The translations under genes and the position numbers were made by a program. A DNA stretch of 63,998 nucleotides, filler included, from Octopus bimaculoides (taxonomy: Eukaryota), in NCBI RefSeq assembly GCF_001194135.2. It is 5 parts of 5 records of this genome, joined end to end, with 100 filler letters (N's around TTAATTAATTAA, not from the genome) between each part and the next. Parts side by side here need not be neighbours in the genome. Positions count along the whole stretch, not along the records: positions 53,156 to 63,998 come from NC_068995.1; 4 more parts are not named here. The stretch is one strand, 5' to 3'. The notes beneath the pieces were generated by a model, which did no database searches, was not told the origin of the DNA, and saw only the letters and a list, made by a program, of their open reading frames with translations. Positions 53,112 to 63,998 of the stretch are shown in pieces (the stretch's first letter is position 1; every line of letters starts with the position of its first letter).

Positions 53112-53514
53112 NNNNNNNNNNNNNNNNNNNNNNNNNNNNNNNNNNNNNNNNNNNNAAATTTGAAATCAATAATGTATCTTTAATCTTATTGTTCTTTATA
53201 GATAAAATTTAGTTCCACTTATTCTATAGTGCTTCACGATAACCTGTCACTGATCCGTTTGTTCTAAAATTCACTGCTTTCTCAATACATTATTTCCACA
53301 CTCGCCATCCCTCCTTTATATAGTCTCTTAACACTATTTCTTTGTTTTATATTATAGATACGTACGTCTAAATTCCAAATCACATTCTTCACCTTTTAAC
53401 TACTCTTTGATAAATTTTATTGATTCAATTGATTTTGTGTGGGTTTATCATGCATTACTCGCTATGCGCTTTGTCTCCGTTATCTATTTTGTATGCTAAA
53501 TCTTACATATATAC

Positions 53515-53574
<60 letters not shown>

Positions 53575-53624
53575 NNNNNNNNNNNNNNNNNNNNNNNNNN
53601 NNATATATGTAGATAGATAGATAG

Positions 53625-53694
<70 letters not shown>

Positions 53695-53794
53695 TATAAA
53701 TTTGGCACTTATACCTTTTTAGATAATTCATTCATCTATTTTCAGTTCTTCAGTTATATTTTAGACAGTGCAATCAATTCCTTTGCATCATTTA

Positions 53795-53890
53795 TTTCGG
53801 CTTCTTACGATTTGAGTTCAAATCCCAGAAGGGTTGGCTTTGCATTTCATTCCTTTGCGGAGCCGTAAAATAGTGTACAAGTCGATGTAA
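53795..53890 (+). mobile_element. SINE family A internal fragment, degenerate
   Basis: tacgatttgagttcaaatccc..ggctttgcatttcattcctttg..gtcgatgtaat. Confidence 0.6.
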
Positions 53891-54004
53891 TTTGTGTAAT
53901 TTATTTAAACGTATAAACCAATGTAATTTATCAGGGTGCGTAGCCTATCTCTACCTTGGTTACCTAAGAACAGAATAGCCGAAACAAGAAATCGAACGAC
54001 CGAT

Positions 54005-54173
54005 ATTCTTTTCTACTCTAGGCACATGGCCCCAAATTTTTGGGGAGGGAGCCGGTAGATTGGATTGACCCCAGTACGCAACTGGTACTTAATTTATCGA
54101 CCCCGAAAGGATGAAAGGCAAAGTCGACCTCGGCGAAATCTGATTTCAGAACGTAAAAACAGACGAAATACCG
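54005..54173 (-). mobile_element. SINE family A (A1 tail), 3' part of a host copy split by an insertion
   Basis: Ends at ataccg and continues collinearly at 55756-55787, as judged against the intact copy at 58473-58620. Confidence 0.9.
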
Positions 54174-55755
54174 ATTTCTTTATTACCCATAAAGGGCTAC
54201 ACAAAGAATTTTTTTAAGACACCACAAAACAAAGACAGTACAAAACGCAAACATAAAATCGGGGTAATTAAAATAAAGTGATAATAAGCAAGAATGAAAA
54301 AAATGAGGCGCAATGTCCACTAGATCCCCGAAGTCGTGTGGTTACATTTATCCAGTTTTTCACTTTTACGTTCAACGCCATGTAAACATTTTAACGGTTT
54401 TGTAACTAAAAAAAATCCAAACACTCACGTTACCTTTCTTCCATTAATCATTGTTACGTCCGTCCTTAACAACTGCAAATAATTAGTTCTAGGGGGTGGT
54501 GCCTCCACCAACCATACCCCGTTTCGTTATTATATTTTCACCAAGTTCTTTAATGCACTCGAAGCATCTTTCCTCACGNNNNNNNNNNNNNNNNNNNNNN
54601 NNNNNNNNNNNNNNNNNNNNNNNNNNNNNNNNNNNNNNNNNNNNNNNNNNNNNNNNNNNNNNNNNNNNNNNNNNNNNNNNNNNNNNNNNNNNNNNNNNNN
54701 NNNNNNNNNNNNNNNNNNNNNNNNNNNNNNNNNNNNNNNNNNNNNNNNNNNNNNNNNNNNNNNNNNNNNNNNNNNNNNNNNNNNNNNNNNNNNNNNNNNN
54801 NNNNNNNNNNNNNNNNNNNNNNNNNNNNNNNNNNNNNNNNNNNNNNNNNNNNNNNNNNNNNNNNNNNNNNNNNNNNNNNNNNNNNNNNNNNNNNNNNNNN
54901 NNNNNNNNNNNNNNNNNNNNNNNNNNNNNNNNNNNNNNNNNNNNNNNNNNNNNNNNNNNNNNNNNNNNNNNNNNNNNNNNNNNNNNNNNNNNNNNNNNNN
55001 NNNNNNNNNNNNNNNNNNNNNNNNNNNNNNNNNNNNNNNNNNNNNNNNNNNNNNNNNNNNNNNNNNNNNNNNNNNNNNNNNNNNNNNNNNNNNNNNNNNN
55101 NNNNNNNNNNNNNNNNNNNNNNNNNNNNNNNNNNNNNNNNNNNNNNNNNNNNNNNNNNNNNNNNNNNNNNNNNNNNNNNNNNNNNNNNNNNNNNNNNNNN
55201 NNNNNNNNNNNNNNNNNNNNNNNNNNNNNNNNNNNNNNNNNNNNNNNNNNNNNNNNNNNNNNNNNNNNNNNNNNNNNNNNNNNNNNNNNNNNNNNNNNNN
55301 NNNNNNNNNNNNNNNNNNNNNNGTTGATGTACGTGACTTCATTGACAATTTCACCCAGGCACTCCTCGATTTCTTCTTCCGTCACCATTTCAATTTTACC
55401 GGTTTCGACAGCCTGTGTACGATACACTACTCTGTTCAGAATATTATTTTCTTTAGTCTCTTTTGGGGGGACACAATTTGTACGAGTCTCCCTCAACTTC
55501 TATCAAATTCCTGCTTCTGGTCACCTCCTCCATATCCAACTTGATTAACTTGGTTTCCAGCGGCACTGGCTTCCTCACCGCAGTGGCCTTGACGTAGCTC
55601 TCCATACTGGAAACACTACCACTTGCCATAGCTGGGAAAAATGCAGCAGCTCACGTGAAATACAACCGTAATAATTCCACATAAATCACAATTATTCACC
55701 GAGACAGTTTTCACAAAGCAACACAACAGTATTCACAATAATTCACAGAGCCGTT
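54174..55755 (-). mobile_element. TSD-bounded single-ORF (ORF1-only, HAL1-like) non-LTR element
   Basis: Perfect 6-bp TSD ATACCG at 54168-54173 and 55756-55761. On the minus strand: 126-nt 5' UTR, one ORF, ~310-nt 3' UTR ending gccctttatgggtaataaagaaat. Contains a 744-N internal gap. Confidence 0.75.
54489..55629 (-). pseudogene. ORF1/gag-like reading frame of the element above (at least one frameshift; middle in the gap)
   Basis: ATG at 55629 gives MASGSVSSMESYVKATAVRKPVPLETKLIKLDMEEVTRSRNLIEVEGDSYKLCPP. After a frameshift at C6A4: KETKENNILNRVVYRTQAVETGKIEMVTEEEIEECLGEIVNEVTYIN-gap-..KELGENIITKRGMVGGGTTP*. About 380 codons if the gap size is right. Confidence 0.6.
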
Positions 55756-55787
55756 ATACCGCGAAGCAATTCGACCGGCGTGCTAAC
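55756..55787 (-). mobile_element. SINE family A head piece of the split host copy
   Basis: ataccgcgaagcaattcgaccggcgtgctaac is the continuation of 54005-54173. Confidence 0.85.
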
Positions 55788-55856
55788 ATTTATCTCTTTA
55801 TGGCCCTCAAGGGGCTACAAACAAGGACAGACAAACGGATTAAGTCGATTAAGTCA
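55788..55856 (-). mobile_element. Isolated SINE A2-type 3' tail
   Basis: tctttatggccctcaaggggcta-caaacaaggacagacaaacggattaagtcgatt matches 58358-58425. Confidence 0.75.
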
Positions 55857-55957
55857 CTACGCAACTTCGCCTGCGTCGACAATTTTTCATATATTTATCT
55901 TTGCAAAGGACAACGACAATAAGCCATTTCTTAGGAACATAATATATTTCATTGTTC

Positions 55958-56172
55958 AAGGCAGTGAGCTGGCAGATTCGTTAGCAGGCCGGACAAAGTG
56001 CTTAGCGTCACTTAGTTCGTCTTTGTGTTCTGAGTTCAGATTCCGCAGAGGTCCACTTTGCCCCTCAGGCTTTCGGAGTCGCTAAAATAAGCACTAGTTG
56101 CGTACTGGGGTCGATCTAATCGACTTAACTACTCCGTTGTAATTGCAGACCTTGTGCCAGAATCTGAAATCA
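55958..56172 (+). mobile_element. SINE family A, full length (A1 tail)
   Basis: aaggcagtgagctggcagattcgttagc (A-box), ctgagttcagattcc (B-box), tail ccttgtgccagaatctgaaatc. Confidence 0.9.
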
Positions 56173-56611
56173 CTATATTTTATTACACTGTTTTAATACA
56201 TTCCCATACAAAGATTCACAAGAATGCATTCATAGTTACGTATGTACATTCATAAGTTGCAGGTGTATATATATATACATAAGCTATAATGACCATAGAG
56301 AAGAAAAATAAGATGATTAAACGGTAATGGGAATAAACCAAGGTAATTCAATTCTTTCTATCTTTACATAACTGTCAGTAATAGCATGGTGACGTCTATT
56401 ACGTATTTATGGACAAGGAATTTTAAGTATCACATCTGCTTAGGACAGATAATTAATCTAATTAAACTGATCAAAGGGTTACTGTAATTAATTACTGTCT
56501 TCTGGGGATGTGACACTTACAATACGAAAACGTATAATAAGCATCAATAAGTTATTTGTGAATCACAAGACAAGAATGGCCAGCTTGGGCCAAAATTTGA
56601 AATCAAGAAAT

Positions 56612-56785
56612 GCAGCGCGCTGGCGGAATTGGTAGCGCTCCGGCCAAAATGCTAAGCGGCATTTCATTCGTTTTCCCATTGAGTTCAAATTTCACCAGAG
56701 CCCACTTTAAGTTTCATACATTCGGGGTCAATATAATCGAAAATTGGATCCAATATAGTCGACTTGACTACATAAACTCTCAATT
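56612..56785 (+). mobile_element. SINE family A, degenerate
   Basis: gctggcggaattggtagcgctccggccaaaatgctaagcggcatttc..gagttcaaattt. Confidence 0.8.
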
Positions 56786-56835
56786 CGTTGTTCAACCTTC
56801 GGTTTCGAACCTTGGAATGTCGAAAGTTGGATTTC

Positions 56836-57250
56836 GATGTGACACAGAAACCATTTTAACTGACAAGCAAAAAACTCTGGCGAATACCTGGAGCATAGAA
56901 TAATTTCACAAATGCCTAACACAAACCACGAAGTGAATAAATTAAATAGGCAATCACAGATTCCAGAATACAATTGAACATTATCTCAAAAAAAAACTGT
57001 AACCAAAACTGGGTGTACAATTATCTCACACAACCTGCCACAAATGTAGGATTCAAACTTCACATGAATATTACAACATAACTTACGAAATTTTTGTACT
57101 CACCCAGATGTGACACAAATTATTTTAGAACTGACAGGCAAAAAGTTCTGGCGAATTCTTGGAGCATAAAATAATCCACAAATGCCTAACACAAAGCACA
57201 AAGTGCTTACACTAGAACAGGCAATCACCGCTTCTAGTATCCAATAGAAC
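56836..57250. repeat. Diverged direct repeat, ~144-bp aligned unit at 271-bp spacing
   Basis: 56836-56979 and 57107-57250 share gatgtgacaca..aactgaca.gcaaaaa..ctggcgaat..tggagcata..ataat..cacaaatgcctaacacaaa..ggcaatcac. Confidence 0.8.
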
Positions 57251-57288
57251 AAAACTCTCCTGCGCGGAAGGAGGGGTGNNNNNNNNNN

Positions 57289-57312
57289 CGGGTTCGATAC
57301 CCGGCATCTCCA
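57289..57312 (+). tRNA. 3' third of a tRNA-Ala-like sequence (T arm plus acceptor strand); remainder hidden by a 10-N gap
   Basis: CGGG-TTCGATA-CCCG-G-CATCTCC-A. The T loop and 3' acceptor strand with U70 and discriminator A73 are as in eukaryotic tRNA-Ala. No T4 terminator immediately downstream. Confidence 0.45.
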
Positions 57313-57327
57313 TCATTTATAATTTCG

Positions 57328-57372
<45 letters not shown>

Positions 57373-57394
57373 CATACATACATACACATGCATA

Positions 57395-57731
57395 TATAAT
57401 AGATACAATAGAAAGATTCAAATCAGGCAGACTACGATTAACACATACATATAGGGTTTAGTTAGGATAAAATAAGAATTGTCCAATCTGAAACATACAT
57501 TGATATATTAGAAATATAAAAATATAGAAAGATAAAAACAGAATACACTATTCTTATTATATTTACATATCTATATATCTATGTATATTTTTAGTATTCA
57601 TATATTTTTATATTTCTATATTTTTATATTTTTCAGTTTGGACACTTCTCATTTTATCCTAATTAAACCCGTAGATGTATGTATTAATCGTAGTCTGCCT
57701 GATTTGAACCTTTTCTATTGTATCTATTATA
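57395..57731. mobile_element. MITE with ~100-bp terminal inverted repeats and TA ends
   Basis: tataatagatacaatagaaagattcaaatcaggcagactacgattaa...gtccaatctgaaa (57395-57493) is close to the reverse complement of 57631-57731. The core is AT-rich. Confidence 0.85.
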
Positions 57732-57789
57732 CTTGTCTAGCGCCTCAGGTTCGACTTGAGCACTTCTATGCTATATTTTTCGAAAGAAA

Positions 57790-58085
57790 ATTATAATTAT
57801 ATACGTATATATATATATGTATGTATGTATATATATACGTATAAATACATACATACATATATGATATAAATAATATATAAATATATGCATATATCCATAC
57901 ATATATATATACATACATACACATATATGTATATATGCATGCATATATGGGTACAGGACATTAAAAAAAAACGTTGAACACAATGGAAACCGAAAACATA
58001 AAAACAAAAACATAGAAAACGAACTTTTTTTCGAACAACGAAAAAAACAGAGAAACGAAACATGCAACATAAAGAGTATACTCCT
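57790..58085 (-). repeat. Unclassified interspersed repeat (family P), copy 2
   Basis: tgcatatatgggtacaggaca (57940-57960) and the adjacent sequence match 24320-24437 in reverse. Confidence 0.55.
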
Positions 58086-58325
58086 GTATATATCTACGTA
58101 TGTGTGTATGTATGTATAAATTACCTTTACAATTTGGAGAGTTCAGAAAATAACTTAAATATAAGCGTAAGTCAGTAAAGTTAGTTGGCGAACAATTAAA
58201 GTTTAATTGGAAACATCCGAACACTTCCAGTTGTGTTGCATTGGTTGCAGGCAACATATCGAGACGATACAATGTAATGGTATATTGACAGGTAGTTGTA
58301 AAGATAATTTATGAACAAACTGTAT

Positions 58326-58770
58326 GTACGACGGGATTCTTTCAGTTCTCTATTTCTTTATTTCTTTATTGCCCACAAGGGGCTAAACATAGAGGGGACA
58401 AACAAGGACAGACAAAGGGATTTATATTGATTTGAATATCGTTGAATAAACTGATGTCTATATGTCAATATAGTGCGTAACTGGTACTTAATTTATCGAC
58501 CCCGAAATGATGAAAGGCAAAGTCGATTTCGGCGGAATTTGAACTCAGAACGTAACGGCAGACGAAATCCCGCTAAGTATTTCGCCCGGCGTGCTAACGT
58601 TTCTGCCAGCTCGCTGCCTTTCATTTCCCGTCAACCAAATCCCCTCACAAGGGCTTTTTGGTCGGCCCGGTGTCAGTAGAAAACACTTGTCTAAGATACA
58701 ACAATGTGAAACCGAATACTCTGAACCATGTAGTTTTGGAAACGAACTTCTTACCACACAGTCACGCCAG
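58326..58770 (-). mobile_element. SINE family B head, split by a SINE A2 insertion
   Basis: cgacgggattctttcagtt | insertion | ttcccgtcaaccaaat..cttcttaccacacagtcacgcc is collinear with 61072-61232. Confidence 0.8.
58351..58620 (-). mobile_element. SINE family A, full length, A2 tail
   Basis: Head aaggcagcgagctggcagaaacgttagc, B-box gagttcaaattcc, tail tttagccccttgtgggcaataaagaaataaagaaata. Flanked by ctttcagttc / ctttcatttc. Confidence 0.9.
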
Positions 58771-59802
58771 CATAAAATCATGCATTAATACTTCCATGCA
58801 GTTTCAACTCGATCAACTCACACATACATATGCACTCACTAAATGTGCATCTGGTACAAAAAAAAAGAATCAATATTTTTAATTAAAAAGTGTTGAATGT
58901 TTCTAGTAAATTGCTTTTCATGCATGTAATAAAGTAGATCTAACATACTGGCTTCATCTTAGATACGTAAAATGACTTGACAACTGACAGATTTAAGTTA
59001 ATTTCTTCATTGAAATTTCATTATTTTTGTAGATTTAAATATGCAATTTTATATACAACTATGGCAGATTTCAAATAAAATATAAAGAAAATCTGGGATT
59101 ATGGATGTTATTAATTTGTGCGTTCTTGTCTTCAAAGTTCAAAATCTCACACAATGCCAAAATCGAAATTCTATAAGACTTCTAATATGAAACTATAAAA
59201 ATTTATTTAAAAATCCGTTTTCTTTTTATTGTAAATACCTGCAATATTAAAAGCAATTTTACATACACACACATACACACAAACACATACACACAAACAC
59301 ACACACACATATGCATGCATGTGTGCGTGTATGTATGTATGTATGTAGATTTGCATGTATGTGTGCGTATATAAGTGTGTGTGTGTTTGTGTGTAAATAT
59401 AAACGTCATACACACATTCACACACATATACATAACTGCTTTCAACACACGTCATATATATGTAGATATATACACATGTGTGTGTGTATGAATGCGTTTG
59501 TGTGTGTATGTGTGTGGGCACACACATAGACATATACCTATCTAAATATACATGCACAGAGAAACATATTTACAGATACATGTATAGGCGTACAGACGTT
59601 TCACTTTCTCATAGCATATGATCAACAGCTGCACAAAACTGTTATTAATATACTTCAATAACACCAGAATGGCTTTTTATTAAAACAATGTACTATTGTT
59701 CGTAATAAGTATTACCCAGGTATAGAAAAAAAGTCTGTTATTACTTGCATCCATCCATCCATACATACATACATACATACATACATACATACATACATAC
59801 AT

Positions 59803-60060
59803 TTCGCACAGGCAATAAAAGTATGTACTGCCATAGAGGTCAGCTGTCCTGCTGATGTGAACAGCACTTTGAAAATCAAAAATATAATAACTACAGACAA
59901 TTGCTTCGAAAACTATAGCGTCTATATTCAGATCAGAAATTTACTTTTGTACCAATAATAATTTGTGCACTTAGCTTTGTGAGGGAATGCCTAAGTGACA
60001 GTCTGGATAAGTTAAGACTTTCTGATAAAGAAATCAATCTTCTTTGAGTAAATGCAAAGA
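59803..60060 (+). mobile_element. 3' fragment (restriction-like endonuclease) of the same R4/Dong-like family as 8851-10790
   Basis: KVCTAIEVSCPADVN..KIK..QLLR..YSD..PIII; DNA is collinear with the reverse complement of ~9010-9280. Confidence 0.85.
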
Positions 60061-60810
60061 AACGACCTTTTCTGAATACATCGTAGCAGTAATCAAACAG
60101 TTTAAAATAAAATCCACGTAGAAAAATTACTATACATACATCATGAGGACGACAGAATACGCAGTCAGCTATCGCAGATCGTGGGGCAATCGAGTAAAAT
60201 TCCAGTGGATTGCTGAACTAAACAAAGACCAATATCGGTTCCACAGGAAGGCCTAGGAAGATCCCTCGACAGCTTTCTATTAAAACCATAGGGGGAACAA
60301 CTTCACCACGACGATTCCTACTACTACTACTACTATTGTTATTATCATTACTGCTGCTGGTTATTCGACGGCTACAAACACTCCTAGAAATCTTGACCAC
60401 TGTTTAATTCACAAAAACAGATAGTAGTAATTTACTATCACAGCGAGTTGGAATTACTATGGCTTCAGATCGTAACGAAAGGACCACGTGCGCATGCAAG
60501 AAATAACAGTAAACTATGAATGTCATTCTTAATTTTAATTTCAATTTTATTCTATTAATAGCCTTCTTCTCTTCTCACATATTTTATACTCATTGTTGAT
60601 AAGGTTTTTTAAAAAAACTGAAACATTGTAAATTAATTAAAACACCCAAAAAATGATTTAAAATAGTAGCATTTTCATTTTTATTTATCTTTAATATCTA
60701 CTTACTCGTGTGGTACTTTTACAAATCTTTTCAAATATATGTATGCCCTATTTATAATCATATTTATAATCGTTTGTTCAGTCTGCGGTGAAACGGTTAA
60801 AATTTGCCCG

Positions 60811-61028
60811 TTTTTATTCTTCTACTCATTTATTTGTTTCAGTTATTTGACTGCGGCCGTACTGGAGCACATCCTTTAGTCGAACAAATGGACTCCAGCA
60901 CTTATTCTTTGTATGCCTAGTACTTATTCTATCGTTCTCCTTTGCAGAACCATTAAGTTACGGGGACGTAAAACAACAACGTCGGTTGTCAAGCGATGAT
61001 GGGGAGACCAACGCAGACACACCGACAT

Positions 61029-61075
<47 letters not shown>

Positions 61076-61232
61076 ACAGGCTTGTTTCAGTTTCTGTCTC
61101 ACCACTCAAAAGGCTGTGGTCTGCTCGAGGCTATAGTAGAAGACACTTGCCCAAGATGCAACGCAGTGGTACTGAACCCGGAACCATGTGGTTGGTAGGC
61201 AGGCTACTTACCACACAGCCACTCCTGCGCCT
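60811..61232 (-). mobile_element. SINE family B, essentially full length, with internal (TA)/(TATG) tract
   Basis: Head aggcgcaggagtggctgtgtggtaagtagc (A-box), ccgggttcagtacc (B-box), central cttgggcaagtgtcttctactatagcctc, and a 3' part matching 30340-30502. Confidence 0.9.
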
Positions 61233-61287
61233 ACCATATGTTACACTTACACAATATATCTATGGACAGACAGACAGACAGACAGAC

Positions 61288-61371
<84 letters not shown>

Positions 61372-61955
61372 GAAAATGTGCAAAAACATTACGAGAATGA
61401 TTGTAGTCTTTTAAGAAAAATTATATATTTATTTAGCTCTTTCATAGTTTTAAGGATTCATCATGTACAAGTTGTTTTATAGAAAATTTATGCCTTTTAT
61501 GTGAGCTATTTGAAAAATATGGAGTTGAATTTGTTTTCTAGGGTTTTAGAAAAAGGATGATTTGGGAGTGAAATCTTGTGATGTTCTTTGTTATTTTGAA
61601 TCTATACGAACGGGTATGTTTGTGTATATATGTGTACGTACGTATATGTGTGTAATTATGTGTGTGAGGTGAGGTTTTAAACAAAGCATATATGAAAGGT
61701 TTTTGGAGGTTTGGTTAAAGAAAGAAAGAAAGAAAGAAAGAAGGAAAGAAAGAAAGAAGGAAGGAAAGAAAGAAAGAGTGTTTTTTCTGGAATCATTCAA
61801 ATCGATGACAAATCAATGAATAATGTCAATCTTTTTAATCAATTGCGATAAGTTTCTTTTATTCAGTGAATGACTGACTGGATTTTGTTGTCCAGCTGTA
61901 GAAAAAAGAATCTATGAAACTGTTTTAGAGAGCTTTTAAATGTGTGCGTGTGCGT

Positions 61956-61989
<34 letters not shown>

Positions 61990-62726
61990 TGATTGTTTAA
62001 ATTTTTCCAGTTATTTTAGTAACATTAATGACAAAATTAATAATGATATCTAGAGAGAATCTGGGTTGGCTCATCTGAGAAAGTAACTTTGTGTGACGTA
62101 ACTCTAATTTTTTTTATATTTTCTTTCCCGGGTTCTTTTTCACCTTTCCACTTTTTGCATCAATGTTCTTCTCGTTTTTTTTTTTTCTCGTGGTTTCTCA
62201 TGTACCAGCGTCTTGATACTCAAATAAAACAGACCATCAATTCAGAGCCCGGAGAAAGTTTGGAGTCACAAGGCATGTTGTAAAGACCTGCCTAGACACG
62301 TGTCTTCACATGAAGACACTGTTTAGTAGCTCGTATCTTTATATTGTGTACAAGAAATGATATTTATCTCTGACTGGAATGAGTACTCTTTCGTTGCTGG
62401 AACATTAAACTATACATATGTATATGTATATGCATATCTATATAGAGAGAGATATGTATATATGTGTGCGTGTCTGTATGGCTCTGTGTATGTATGTGTG
62501 TGCGTGTATATGTATGTGCATATATGTATGTGTGTATATATGTATATATCTATATACGCATATACATACACACACACGTACACACCCATACACATACATA
62601 TATATGTAATATGCTTGTGTGTGTCTGTGTGTATGTTTATGTGTATTGAAACATTTATGCATGTGTATCTATATATTTAAATATATATATATATACATAT
62701 AAATATGCATATACACGCACACACAC

Positions 62727-62785
<59 letters not shown>

Positions 62786-62981
62786 NNNNNNNNNNNNNNN
62801 NNNNNNNNNNNNNNNNNNNNNNNNNNNNNNNNNNNNNNNNNNNNNNNNNNNNNNNNNNNNNNNNNNNNNNNNNNNNNNNNNNNNNNNNNNNNNNNNNNNN
62901 NNNNNNNNNNNNNATATATATACATATATATATGTATATAGTATGCGTATGTGTGTACATATATATATATGCATATACATG

Positions 62982-63037
<56 letters not shown>

Positions 63038-63235
63038 ATATGTTTTAATATAATAATATAATGTAATATGATATAATATACACACATACACCTGCATATA
63101 CGATAAAAGTGATTGTATGCCTGCGGTAACTAAGATTCGTAACTGATATATTCCCGTCTGAATTTGAATAGCTGTCGTCTGCATTTGATTAATGATTTTA
63201 GTCTTATATCTCTTGATGAATACCACAAAATTTTC

Positions 63236-63760
63236 TTAACTCTTTTTATTCAATATCAAAAGGTCAGGTAGAAGACATGCTTTATGTGCAGAAATAATAT
63301 TGAAACTAGAATAGATATTAAATATATCCACTCTTTTAAATTTAATATTAGAAAATGCTCAGAGACGCAGTGAGGAAGATGTGTTAGATAATGTGTCAGA
63401 GTGGGATGAACAGAGAGAGAGTGAGAGCAAGGAGTGATTCAGAGTGTGAGGGAGAAAGAGAGTGAGAGAGGTGTAGAGAGAATAAAGGGACATCATCAAT
63501 GTGCGAACAAGTGATCCAGAAGGGTGTGTTAGTGTGAGAGCAAAAGATAGATACGTGATATTGATGAGAAAAAGAGAAACAGAGATGAAAAGGGAGATAT
63601 TTACGATACGGAGGAATGACATTTGTGAGGAACAAATTCAGAGAGGTTGAAGTTATTGAAAGAGAGTCAGGCAAAAGCAGAAATTTCAAGAAAAATATAT
63701 AAGTGGAATATTTACGATTAAACACGCCGGCAGAGTGTTACTTTGGAGACGAAATTACCA
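63236..63760 (+). mobile_element. Possible decayed piggyBac-like 5' remnant
   Basis: TTAA followed by ctcttt (piggyBac ends start CCCTTT), then an acidic peptide RRSEEDVLDNVSEWDEQRESES and CVSVRAKD. No DDD catalytic region visible. Confidence 0.2.
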
Positions 63761-63998
63761 TAGATTAGAAAATGAGAGAAGGGGAAAGCTTCCCTGGTGT
63801 TGGATGACCTGTACTTGAAAACATATATACATATATATAAATATATAGTTTTAGGGAAAAGAACCAAGGTTCATGAACTCATCGATGAAAATCCACTGTC
63901 ACATATAGAAAAAATAATAATAAAAAGCACAATAAATGACTATAATATAATACAAAGTATGAATATATATATTGAGAGATATATACATATGTCTATAT

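What the first reader, a model, noticed from the sequence alone, without database searches (positions are those of the whole stretch)
54168..55761. Complete, TSD-bounded ORF1-only retroelement nested in a SINE
Seen: removing 54174-55761 restores an uninterrupted SINE A head (gttagcacgccggtcgaattgcttcgcggtatttcgtctg), collinear with the intact copy at 58473-58620. The insertion is flanked by a perfect ATACCG duplication, so both ends are defined. Inside are a 5' UTR, one ATG-initiated ORF of ~380 codons whose visible ends lack EN/RT motifs, a 3' UTR, and an AATAAAGAAAT end. At 1582 bp there is no room for an ORF2. Known: ORF1-only non-autonomous LINE derivatives (HAL1) exist in other lineages. 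Inference: a protein-coding parasite of a LINE that supplies its own RNA chaperone but borrows the RT. Whether this family is already catalogued needs a Repbase/Dfam search. Caveat: 744 bases are N.
Basis: partly seen in the sequence, partly recalled or inferred. Interest (0 to 1): 0.85.

Follow-up and report, generated by a model that had tools for sequence, protein, structure and literature searches.

The report
Gag-only retroposon inside an octopus SINE
This is a dead copy of a ~1.6-kb octopus jumping element that encodes only an RNA-binding Gag/ORF1-type protein and no reverse transcriptase; related copies show the family is real, is kept by selection, and is found at the same nucleotide of a SINE in all three O. 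bimaculoides copies examined.

Summary
The physical observation holds. Removing 54174-55761 restores a colinear SINE, and a perfect 6-bp duplication (ATACCG) bounds a minus-strand insert that ends in AATAAAGAAAT.

The "single ~380-codon ORF" does not hold as assembled. The ATG frame stops after 58 codons at a C6A4 run, and a second +1 shift lies at 54517-54520. This copy is dead.

The gap question is settled by relatives:
- The family is Octopus bimaculoides "CCHC-type domain-containing" gene models.
- The residues just after the gap are the C-terminus of the same protein.
- In a relative that is continuous across this region, the gap-equivalent stretch is about 800 nt and contains only the middle of that ORF (two RRM-like folds and one CCHC knuckle).
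- No copy in three octopus datasets has EN or RT. Units are 1.56-1.78 kb.
- dN/dS is 0.2-0.3.
- One O. vulgaris unit has an intact 467-aa ORF.

New findings:
- The last 35-70 nt are the tail of the local 230-nt SINE family, which implies trans-mobilisation by that SINE's LINE partner.
- All three O. bimaculoides copies examined sit at the same SINE nucleotide; the two with both junctions visible are in clearly different host SINEs.
- O. vulgaris carries a head-to-tail 1.78-kb array.

This is a HAL1/HeT-A-like gag-only retroposon with a type-I-like ORF1, a new variant of a known kind.

The parts
54174..55755 (-). The inserted single-ORF (gag-only) non-LTR retroposon copy. It is 1582 nt as assembled and about 1.64 kb once the gap is sized from a relative.
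   Evidence: Bounded by the TSD and by restoration of the SINE. It is 94-97% identical to the copy L007 5605-6936 and 76-83% identical to L005 9207-10847.
55756..55761 (.). Target-site duplication, upstream copy (CGGTAT in the element's sense orientation).
   Evidence: L007 has the same duplication (TGGTAT/CGGTAT).
54168..54173 (.). Target-site duplication, downstream copy.
55630..55755 (-). 5' UTR (126 nt). It starts AACGGCTCTGTGAATTATTG, the same 5' end as in L007.
   Evidence: It is homologous to the 5' UTRs of L004, L005 and L006 by eye.
55323..55629 (-). N-terminal coding part (102 codons once the frameshift is removed). As assembled, the ATG frame stops at 55453-55455.
   Evidence: The frame-fused peptide matches P0001 residues 1-102 at 85% identity, E = 2e-46.
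55461..55470 (-). Frameshift 1: a C6A4 homopolymer run in the KLCPPK codons. The same run is an indel hotspot in relatives.
   Evidence: L006 units carry either C6 (out of frame) or C7 (in frame).
54579..55322 (.). Assembly gap (744 N). It is predicted to hold about 800 nt: two RRM-like folds, the CCHC knuckle and a K/E-rich stretch of the same ORF.
   Evidence: L005 has 805 nt between the matching points and an open 386-codon frame there.
54425..54578 (-). C-terminal coding part: REERCFECIKELGENIITKR, then (after the shift) VWLVEAPPPRTNYLQLLRTDVTMINGRKVT*. The assembled stop is TAG 54489-54491; the family-frame stop is TGA 54425-54427.
   Evidence: Matches the C-termini of P0023 and P0024.
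54517..54520 (-). Frameshift 2: one extra G (G4) relative to L007 and L005.
54290..54350 (-). Conserved 3'-UTR block (AAATGTAACC...CGA.TTCGGGGATCGAGTGGACATTGCGCCTCATTT) with a predicted stem-loop.
   Evidence: It is 85% identical to L004 1406-1466, although the proteins are only about 35-40% identical. RNAalifold gives 15 pairs but only 1 compensatory pair.
54174..54245 (-). 3' tail shared with the SINE family: hairpin GCCC/GGGT (54185-54197) plus the terminal AATAAAGAAAT. Similarity is strong over 54174-54207 and gapped up to about 54245.
   Evidence: (D10: 85% to 58360-58393).
55762..55791 (-). Host SINE, head piece. Together with the upstream TSD copy it spans consensus positions 17-52.
54005..54167 (-). 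Host SINE, remainder (consensus position 53 onward). It carries a different 3' end: ...CCCCAAAAATTTGGGGCCATGTGCCTAGAGTAGAAAAGAAT.
55792..55851 (-). Neighbouring 5'-truncated SINE. Its tail (...TAGCCCCTTGAGGGCCATAAAGAGATAAAT) abuts the host SINE head.
   Evidence: (D10, D15).

Best explanation
WHAT IT IS
54174-55755(-) is a decayed copy of a non-autonomous non-LTR retroposon family of octopuses. The ~1.6-1.8-kb unit has four parts:
- a short 5' UTR;
- one ORF of about 420-470 codons;
- a ~250-nt 3' UTR with a conserved block;
- a 35-70-nt 3' tail identical in kind to the tail of the abundant 230-nt tRNA-related SINE around it.

The ORF encodes a Gag/ORF1-type protein: an N-terminal domain, two RRM-like folds, one CCHC zinc knuckle, a K/E-rich linker and a conserved C-terminal domain. 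There is no endonuclease or reverse transcriptase.

PROPOSED MECHANISM
1. (Inferred) The element is transcribed from its own 5' region.
2. (Inferred from the domain type) Its protein binds and chaperones the RNA.
3. (Inferred from tail sharing) The LINE that mobilises the SINE recognises the shared hairpin-plus-AAAGAAAT tail.
4. (Shown by the junction structure) That LINE copies the RNA into the genome by target-primed reverse transcription. The result is a short TSD and no poly(A).

THIS INSERTION
- It went into the tip of the hairpin in the SINE's tRNA-like head.
- In O. bimaculoides the same nucleotide is occupied in two further loci; the one with both junctions visible (L007) lies in a clearly different host SINE. 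I read this as a strong target preference of the shared machinery.
- This copy later acquired two +1 frameshifts.
For: SINGLE INSERTION
- The SINE is restored and a 6-bp TSD bounds the insert.
- Scans of the equivalent copies in L007 and L008 found no LTR or TIR.

FAMILY AND ORF
- phmmer of the frame-fused N-terminus against 1.84 billion representatives gave O. bimaculoides proteins at E = 2e-46 to 1e-36, plus diverged Logan relatives.
- zf-CCHC scores above Pfam's cut-off in P0001, P0003, P0022, P0023, P0027 and P0028. No RVT, Exo_endo_phos or Transposase_22 hit was found.
- The C-terminus after the gap matches P0023 and P0024.
- L005 has an open 386-codon frame across the gap-equivalent region.
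- One L006 unit has an intact 467-aa ORF.

SELECTION
- dN/dS is 0.32 for L005 vs L007 (269 codons). Wrong-frame controls give 0.76 and 0.86. Fisher p = 1e-8.
- dN/dS is 0.17-0.26 among the units of the O. vulgaris array.
- dN/dS is 0.31 between the species.

FOLD
- The domain model has pLDDT 60.6 and pTM 0.54, with beta-alpha-beta-beta-alpha-beta topology twice.
- The top Foldseek hits are tandem-RRM proteins: IMP3 RRM12, UP1, HuR RRM1-2 and Prp24.

UNIFORM ARCHITECTURE
- L004 is about 1.57 kb.
- The window copy and L005 are about 1.64 kb; the L007 copy matches their ends but is interrupted by a 10-N gap.
- The L006 and L008 units are 1.78 kb.

TAIL
- It is shared with full-length SINE copies at 85-87%.
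- It is retained in all lineages although the proteins are only about 35-57% identical.

SAME SITE
- The window, L007 and L005 share identical junctions.
- Window vs L007: the elements are 95.2% identical and the host SINE flanks 81.3% (Fisher p = 9e-8).
- The two host SINEs also have different 5' extents and different tails.
Against: - No LINE with this tail or with a related ORF1 was found in the ~90 kb I could read, so the RT donor is not identified.
- RRM identity rests on a medium-confidence model and on weak Foldseek scores (best E = 1.2e-3). Pfam detects no RRM.
- The window copy itself cannot make the protein.
- The tandem array in O. vulgaris, with a constant 1776-1782-bp period and dN/dS of about 0.2, looks more like a DNA-amplified gene cluster than serial retrotransposition.
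- Target preference rests on three O. bimaculoides loci, only two of which show both junctions.
- The O. vulgaris solo copy (L008) is not in a SINE.
- No expression data were obtained.
Confidence: 0.8

Rival explanations
1. It is an ordinary two-ORF LINE. Either ORF2 is hidden in the mis-sized assembly gap, or this is a one-off internal deletion of such a LINE.
For: - The gap length is only an estimate.
- Full-length LINEs are known to be missing from the short-read O. bimaculoides assembly (PMC9115989).
Against: - The sequence right after the gap is the C-terminus of the same ORF1-type protein, followed by about 250 nt and the TSD.
- The equivalent interval in L005, which is continuous there, is 805 nt of open ORF.
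- L004, L006 (at least 7 units), L007 and L008 all show the same single-ORF unit.
- No RT or EN Pfam hit was found.
Confidence: 0.02
2. It is a retrocopy of a host multicopy gene. On this view the gene is a domesticated gag-like gene kept in tandem arrays. Its mRNA happens to end in a SINE-derived tail, so the LINE machinery occasionally retrocopies it. The dispersed copies would then be processed pseudogenes, not a self-perpetuating parasite.
For: - O. vulgaris has a head-to-tail array of at least 7 units, 95-98% identical, with constant period and dN/dS of 0.17-0.26. One unit has an intact 467-aa ORF.
- RefSeq and UniProt list copies as genes.
- The window copy is dead.
Against: - Dispersed copies keep the full unit, from the same 5' end through to the tail, with TSDs (window and L007).
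- The tail and the 3'-UTR block are conserved across lineages whose proteins are only about 35% identical. This is expected if the RNA ends are needed for propagation.
- dN/dS of 0.32 between two dispersed O. bimaculoides copies of different subfamilies (L005 and L007) implies several coding source lineages.
- The boundary between this rival and the best explanation is partly semantic.
Confidence: 0.12
3. This rival concerns the same-site sub-claim only. The recurrence at one SINE nucleotide would not be site-specific nicking. It would arise in one of two ways:
(a) amplification or gene conversion of one ancestral SINE-plus-element composite; or
(b) reverse-transcriptase template switching at a pause or cleavage point in the anticodon-like hairpin of SINE RNA, producing chimeric cDNAs.
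For: - The site lies at the tip of a predicted 13-bp hairpin of the SINE head.
- In L008(-) 10881-10943, a 5'-truncated SINE carrying the same tail abuts position 48 of another SINE with no SINE head upstream. That fits a chimera better than an insertion.
- L007 5463-5513 is a head-only fragment ending at position 53.
Against: Against (a):
- The elements are 95% identical but the flanks only 81%.
- The nearest mismatches lie 6 nt and 15 nt from the junctions.
- The host SINEs differ in 5' extent and in tail type.

Against (b):
- The window and L007 both show a head ending at position 52 and a body restarting at position 47. That is a clean 6-bp duplication with no untemplated bases, which staggered nicks in TPRT produce directly.
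- A switching model needs two precise jumps to produce the same structure.
Confidence: 0.3

Closest known systems
HAL1 (half-L1) of mammals
   Same: A non-autonomous LINE-type retroposon that encodes only ORF1p and depends on a LINE's ORF2p. HAL1 arose repeatedly (PMC5753468). Here too there is a single ORF under purifying selection, no EN/RT and a uniform short unit.
   Different: - HAL1's protein is L1 ORF1p (coiled coil, RRM and CTD; Pfam Transposase_22) and its 3' end is poly(A).
- This protein has a CCHC knuckle, gives no Transposase_22 hit and has a specific non-poly(A) tail shared with a SINE.
- The host phylum is different, and the parent LINE is unknown.
HeT-A of Drosophila telomeres
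   Same: A gag-only element: the family lacks ORF2. Its ORF1 carries CCHC knuckles, it relies on RT supplied in trans, and it forms head-to-tail arrays (PMC13534243). Here the element is also gag-only with a CCHC knuckle, and L006 is a head-to-tail array.
   Different: - HeT-A is about 6 kb (from my own knowledge), belongs to the Jockey clade and sits at chromosome ends.
- Here the units are 1.6-1.8 kb.
- The array lies 64 Mb into a 226-Mb chromosome, with a constant period.
- Dispersed copies have TSDs.
Type I ORF1p of L2/CR1/Jockey-superfamily LINEs (Khazina and Weichenrieder classes)
   Same: RRM(s) immediately upstream of a CCHC knuckle. Tandem RRMs in such ORF1s gave Prp24-type top hits in published HHpred runs (PMC4120745). 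Prp24 and other tandem-RRM proteins are also among my Foldseek hits.
   Different: - It has one knuckle, whereas the CCHC-bearing groups whose knuckle number is tabulated there have three.
- It has extra N- and C-terminal domains with no database match.
- It is not followed by an ORF2.
LINE-SINE pairs with a common 3' tail (stringent recognition, e.g. L2- or CR1-partnered SINEs)
   Same: A 35-70-nt hairpin-containing tail plus a short terminal repeat, shared between otherwise unrelated retroposons (principle in PMC4824008).
   Different: Here the sharing partners are a SINE and a protein-coding non-autonomous element. The LINE itself has not been seen.
Target-specific non-LTR retrotransposons (R2, Tx1 lineage, Utopia and others)
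   Same: Independent copies at one exact nucleotide of a multicopy sequence (principle in PMC4640811 and PMC4494074).
   Different: - Those elements encode their own specific endonuclease. This one encodes none.
- The target here is a SINE head.
- Other retroposons with the same tail also occur at non-SINE sites, so this is a preference, not strict specificity.

Membership tests
Non-LTR (TPRT-made) retroposon | Flanking target-site duplication and a restored empty site | tested here: met
   A 6-bp TSD, with the SINE colinear after removal. L007 shows the same. L004 has an imperfect TSD of about 15 bp.
Non-LTR (TPRT-made) retroposon | No LTRs or terminal inverted repeats | tested here: met
   Repeat scans of the units in L007 and L008 found none. 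The window ends were compared by eye.
Non-LTR (TPRT-made) retroposon | A 3' end of LINE/SINE type recognised by a LINE RT | tested here: met
   The tail is 85-87% identical to the tail of full-length 230-nt SINE copies. Recognition by an RT could not be tested.
ORF1-only non-autonomous LINE derivative (HAL1-like kind) | Encodes the ORF1 protein only; no EN/RT in any copy | tested here: met
   Pfam finds only zf-CCHC. Units are 1.56-1.78 kb in the window, L004, L005, L006 and L008; L007 matches the same ends but carries a 10-N gap.
ORF1-only non-autonomous LINE derivative (HAL1-like kind) | ORF maintained by purifying selection across copies | tested here: met
   dN/dS is 0.17-0.32, against 0.76-0.86 in wrong-frame controls. 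p = 1e-8.
ORF1-only non-autonomous LINE derivative (HAL1-like kind) | Demonstrable descent from a two-ORF parent LINE with a related ORF1 and 3' end | not testable with these tools
   No whole-genome search of cephalopod DNA and no Repbase/Dfam search was available. None of the 13 tail instances in the loci I held belonged to a LINE.
HAL1 proper (L1-derived) | The protein is L1 ORF1p (Transposase_22: coiled coil, RRM, CTD) | tested here: not met
   No Transposase_22 hit at E <= 1. A CCHC knuckle is present instead.
Type I LINE ORF1p | CCHC zinc knuckle | tested here: met
   PF00098 scores 22-23.6 bits against a cut-off of 20.8 in six family proteins. In the window copy this part lies in the gap.
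Type I LINE ORF1p | RRM immediately upstream of the knuckle | tested here: inconclusive
   - An RNP1-like motif, RGRKFGTVEVRF, is present.
- The AF2 domain model (pLDDT 60.6) shows beta-alpha-beta-beta-alpha-beta twice.
- The top Foldseek hits are tandem RRMs, but the best E is 1.2e-3 and the TM-score about 0.33.
- There is no Pfam RRM hit.
HeT-A-like telomeric gag-only element | Head-to-tail arrays at chromosome ends | tested here: not met
   An array exists (L006), but it lies at 64.2 Mb of a 225.7-Mb chromosome. Dispersed copies are internal.
Target-specific non-LTR retroposon | Independent copies at the same nucleotide of a repeated target | tested here: met
   The window, L007 and L005 share the same junctions. 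The flanks diverge far more than the elements do. The sample is only three loci.
Target-specific non-LTR retroposon | A sequence-specific endonuclease responsible for the targeting | not testable with these tools
   The element encodes none, and the partner LINE is unknown.
tRNA-derived SINE (host element; possibly the CORE-type octopus OR family) | A tRNA-related head with A and B boxes, and a CORE domain | not tested
   - Box-like motifs were seen by eye only.
- ARAGORN and Rfam found no tRNA.
- OR1 of octopus is listed as a CORE-SINE (PMC4824008), but I could not compare sequences.

The most novel reading that the evidence does not exclude
Retroposons carrying this tail, including a protein-coding gag-only element, may home to one nucleotide at the tip of the anticodon-like hairpin of an abundant SINE, using the SINE as a safe harbour. 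This would be a target-preferring, gag-only, non-autonomous non-LTR element. Its protein is kept under selection and, in O. vulgaris, is amplified into a tandem gene array. That raises the possibility that the Gag protein itself contributes to targeting, or has been co-opted by the host.
Probability: 0.35. Interest if true: 0.75.

Novelty: new variant of a known kind. Interest (0 to 1): 0.6.

Why it matters
- Gag/ORF1-only non-LTR elements are known from mammals (HAL1) and Drosophila telomeres (HeT-A). I found no description of one in a mollusc. This one pairs a type-I-like ORF1 with a SINE-type tail instead of poly(A).
- It shows that a "stringent" LINE can support a protein-coding parasite as well as SINEs.
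- The strong purifying selection suggests the ORF1 protein matters for propagation (cis help) or for the host.
- The recurrent insertion point in the SINE head, and the tandem array, give concrete and testable handles on target choice and on TE-to-gene or TE-to-satellite transitions. Octopus genomes are noted for SINE/LINE activity.
- Practically, several "uncharacterized / CCHC-type domain-containing" gene models in O. bimaculoides and O. vulgaris are copies of this element.

Tried and rejected
- Pfam on the two window peptides: no hit.
- First word-indexed protein search with the 102-aa N-terminus: nothing found, although relatives exist. The full phmmer scan found them.
- Exact-protein look-ups for the 58-aa ORF and for P0001, P0003, P0005 and P0023: no record.
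- Rfam: 114 sub-threshold hits, nearly all microRNA-family matches lying in the microsatellite tracts; none lies in the element or SINE and none reaches a gathering score. ARAGORN: no tRNA.
- AF2 on full-length P0003 with 10 sequences: pLDDT 44.7, unusable, not searched.
- Profile search against PDB sequences: only weak retroviral knuckle matches.
- RNAalifold on the 3'-UTR block: a stem-loop, but only one compensatory pair, so structure is not demonstrated.
- Searches of the supplementary transcript files of PMC9115989 for element strings: nothing. The files are truncated and line-wrapped, so this is uninformative.
- The species behind SRR11869391 could not be identified.
- An apparent ~300-nt "deletion" in L007 turned out to be a 10-N assembly gap.
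- Microhomology between the tail end and the target explains the second hotspot (AGAAAC|GTTAGCAC) but not the CGGTAT site.
- Processed pseudogene of a single-copy host gene: rejected because of copy number, the shared tail and the conserved unit ends.
Full report
OBSERVATION

The piece 53156-63998 is AT-rich DNA full of microsatellites and tRNA-related SINEs. One SINE on the minus strand is interrupted.
- Its head ends at 55756-55791 and its body resumes at 54173.
- Joining the two halves with one copy of CGGTAT gives a gapless alignment across the junction to the copies at 58472-58620(-) and 55958-56130(+).
- The duplicated hexamer ATACCG lies at 54168-54173 and 55756-55761.
- The insert, 54174-55755, reads on the minus strand. 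It has a 126-nt leader, an ATG at 55629, and the end ...GTAGCCCTTTATGGGTAATAAAGAAAT with no poly(A).

So the physical description is right.

THE ORF AS ASSEMBLED

It is not one ORF.
- The ATG frame stops after 58 codons, at TAA 55453-55455.
- Coding continues one base out of phase after a C6A4 run at 55461-55470.
- Removing one base there gives a 102-residue peptide. P0001 (O. bimaculoides) matches it from end to end at 85% identity, so that is the true frame.
- Beyond the gap the frame REERCFECIKELGENIITKR is shifted again by an extra G at 54517-54520, relative to two relatives. The family frame then reads VWLVEAPPPRTNYLQLLRTDVTMINGRKVT and stops at 54425-54427.

As assembled, this copy is therefore a pseudogene. 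Two homopolymer errors in the assembly cannot be wholly excluded.

WHAT IS IN THE GAP

A full phmmer scan found a family of O. bimaculoides proteins named only "CCHC-type domain-containing" or "uncharacterized", plus diverged relatives from Logan assemblies.
- P0023 and P0024 carry ...REERCFECIKELDEKLITKRIWLVETPPPRTDYLQLLRTDVTMINGRK at their C-termini. The window sequence just after the gap is therefore the end of the same protein.
- I obtained DNA for a related copy from the chromosome-scale O. bimaculoides assembly (L005; 76-83% identical). The points matching the two gap edges lie 805 nt apart there, against 751 nt in the window. The whole interval is an open frame.
- That frame reads ...RGRKFGTVEVRFAT...CYIC.ERGHMK.KC... 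followed by a K/E-rich stretch.

An ORF2 cannot be hidden in the gap, because the ORF's own stop, about 250 nt of 3' UTR, the tail and the TSD follow it.

THE FAMILY

All copies I could read are single-ORF units:
- L007 (O. bimaculoides, another chromosome; 94-97% identical to the window copy; interrupted by a 10-N gap);
- L005;
- L004, L001 and L002 (Logan run SRR11869391, species unknown; proteins about 35-40% identical; decayed);
- L008 (O. vulgaris, a solo unit);
- L006 (O. vulgaris), where at least seven units form a head-to-tail array with a period of 1776-1782 bp and 95-98% identity.

One array unit has an uninterrupted 467-codon ORF starting at the N-terminal ATG. Pfam detects only the zinc knuckle (above its cut-off) and no RT, endonuclease or L1-ORF1 domain.

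Selection:
- dN/dS is 0.32 between the dispersed copies L005 and L007 (269 codons), against 0.76 and 0.86 in the two wrong frames. Fisher p = 1e-8.
- It is 0.17-0.26 among array units.
- It is 0.31 between the two species' families.

Fold:
- A domain-level AlphaFold model (pLDDT 60.6, pTM 0.54) shows two beta-alpha-beta-beta-alpha-beta modules before the knuckle.
- Its best Foldseek matches are tandem-RRM proteins, but with weak scores.
- This is suggestive of RRMs, not proof.
- The arrangement fits type I LINE ORF1p as defined in the literature (PMC4120745).

HOW IT MOVES

- The last 34 nt of the window element are 85% identical to the 3' end of the local SINE family. Gapped similarity extends to about 70 nt.
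- Full-length 230-nt SINE copies end in this tail.
- In O. vulgaris the similarity covers 46 nt at 87%.
- The tail contains a small conserved hairpin (GCCC/GGGY) followed by AATAAAGAAAT.
- A 61-nt block in the 3' UTR is also conserved. It is 85% identical between lineages whose proteins share only about 35-40%. Support for a structure in it from covariation is weak.

A shared tail is the signature of SINEs and their LINE partners (PMC4824008). I therefore infer trans-mobilisation by that LINE through target-primed reverse transcription. The LINE itself was not seen: every tail instance in about 90 kb of loci belonged to a SINE or to this element.

AN UNEXPECTED REGULARITY

In L007 the element is flanked exactly as in the window...GCTTCGTGGTAT|AACGGCTCTGTG......AATAAAGAAAT|CGGTATTTCGTCTG.... 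L005 shows the same 3' junction; its 5' junction lies in an assembly gap.

This is not one composite that was later duplicated.
- Window vs L007: the elements are 95.2% identical (635 of 667 positions) and the SINE flanks only 81.3% (126 of 155). Fisher p = 9e-8.
- One host SINE starts at consensus position 1 and the other at position 17.
- The two hosts end in different tails.
- Mismatches begin 6 nt and 15 nt from the junctions, which argues against homology-driven copying.

The site lies at the tip of a predicted 13-bp hairpin in the SINE head.

Two further observations bear on this.
- In O. vulgaris, a truncated SINE with the same tail abuts the same position of another SINE, but with no head upstream.
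- A second hotspot exists, where the tail abuts AGAAAC|GTTAGCAC. It is seen at window 55791/55792, at both ends of L004, in L007 and in L008. It can be explained by microhomology with the tail's AAAGAAAT.

I favour a target preference of the shared machinery. RT template switching at this hairpin remains possible.

COMPARISON AND VERDICT

Functionally this is the same kind of element as mammalian HAL1 (ORF1-only; PMC5753468) and Drosophila HeT-A (gag-only, forms arrays; PMC13534243). It is a member of neither.
- The protein is not L1 ORF1p.
- The array is not terminal: it lies 64 Mb into a 226-Mb chromosome.
- The 3' end is a SINE-type tail, not poly(A).

I found no paper describing such an element in cephalopods. 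I could not query Repbase or Dfam.

The corrections are:
- this copy is dead;
- the ORF is about 420 codons, not about 380;
- the SINE nesting recurs at one site;
- the family also exists as a tandem array.

Rating: a new variant of a known kind, of moderate to high interest for transposon biology.

Noticed in passing
L006 1-13143 (O. vulgaris OX597814.1:64244212-64257354): A head-to-tail tandem array of at least 7 element units, with a period of 1776-1782 bp and 95-98% identity. The tail is followed directly by the next 5' UTR. One unit (7523-8926) has an intact 467-aa ORF. dN/dS between units is 0.17-0.26.
   Followed up: partly
window 55791/55792; L007 7112/7114 and (-)32125; L008 1068; L004 bases 18/19 and about 1597: Ends carrying the shared tail repeatedly abut SINE heads at consensus positions 15-21 (AGAAAC|GTTAGCAC). 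This is a second insertion hotspot, plausibly driven by microhomology with the tail's AAAGAAAT. The L004 element has an imperfect TSD of about 15 bp there.
   Followed up: partly
L008 5047-5059 and 6830-6842: The solo O. vulgaris unit is flanked by a perfect 13-nt repeat, CACCTGGAGGAAA. The repeat is homologous to the first 13 nt of the array unit (CACGTGTCGGAAA). It is unclear whether this is a TSD or one unit plus 13 nt of a second.
   Followed up: no
window 55461-55470; L005 about 9440-9465; L006 C-run in each unit; L007 5863-5872: The C/A homopolymer in the KL(C/I)PP codons varies in length between copies (C6 or C7 in array units) and breaks the frame in several. The L007 assembly also breaks there, with a 10-N gap.
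   Followed up: partly
window 58621-58790 (and a fragment at 61204-61228); L008(-) about 10960-11110: A second, unrelated tRNA-like repeat family (GGCTGTGTGGTAAGAAG...ACCACATGGTTC...) lies next to the SINE copies.
   Followed up: no
window 54005-54060 vs 58360-58425: The SINE family has at least two alternative 3' ends: ...CCCCAAAAATTTGGGGCCATGTGCCTAGAGTAGAAAAGAAT and ...TAGCCCCTTGTGGGCAATAAAGAAAT. Both end in AAAGAA(A)T. The hosts of the window and L005 copies carry the first; the host of the L007 copy carries the second.
   Followed up: partly
window 56836-56944 and 57107-57214: Two copies of a ~108-nt segment, 80-84% identical and 270 nt apart (families D9 and D14 in the repeat scan). Identity unknown.
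   Followed up: no
window 53575-53602, about 57277-57288, about 62785-62920: Further short N gaps inside microsatellites. Nearly all Rfam hits in the piece are microRNA-family matches lying in the microsatellite tracts, and every hit is below its gathering score.
   Followed up: yes
UniProt A0A0L8HUA5, A0A0L8FKL1, A0A0L8GL55, A0A0L8ICM9, A0A0L8FZD3; RefSeq LOC128247323, LOC106878877; O. vulgaris LOC118764671-type models: Public gene models annotated as "uncharacterized" or "CCHC-type domain-containing" proteins are copies of this retroposon. Several are chimeric or truncated by frameshifts and assembly gaps.
   Followed up: partly
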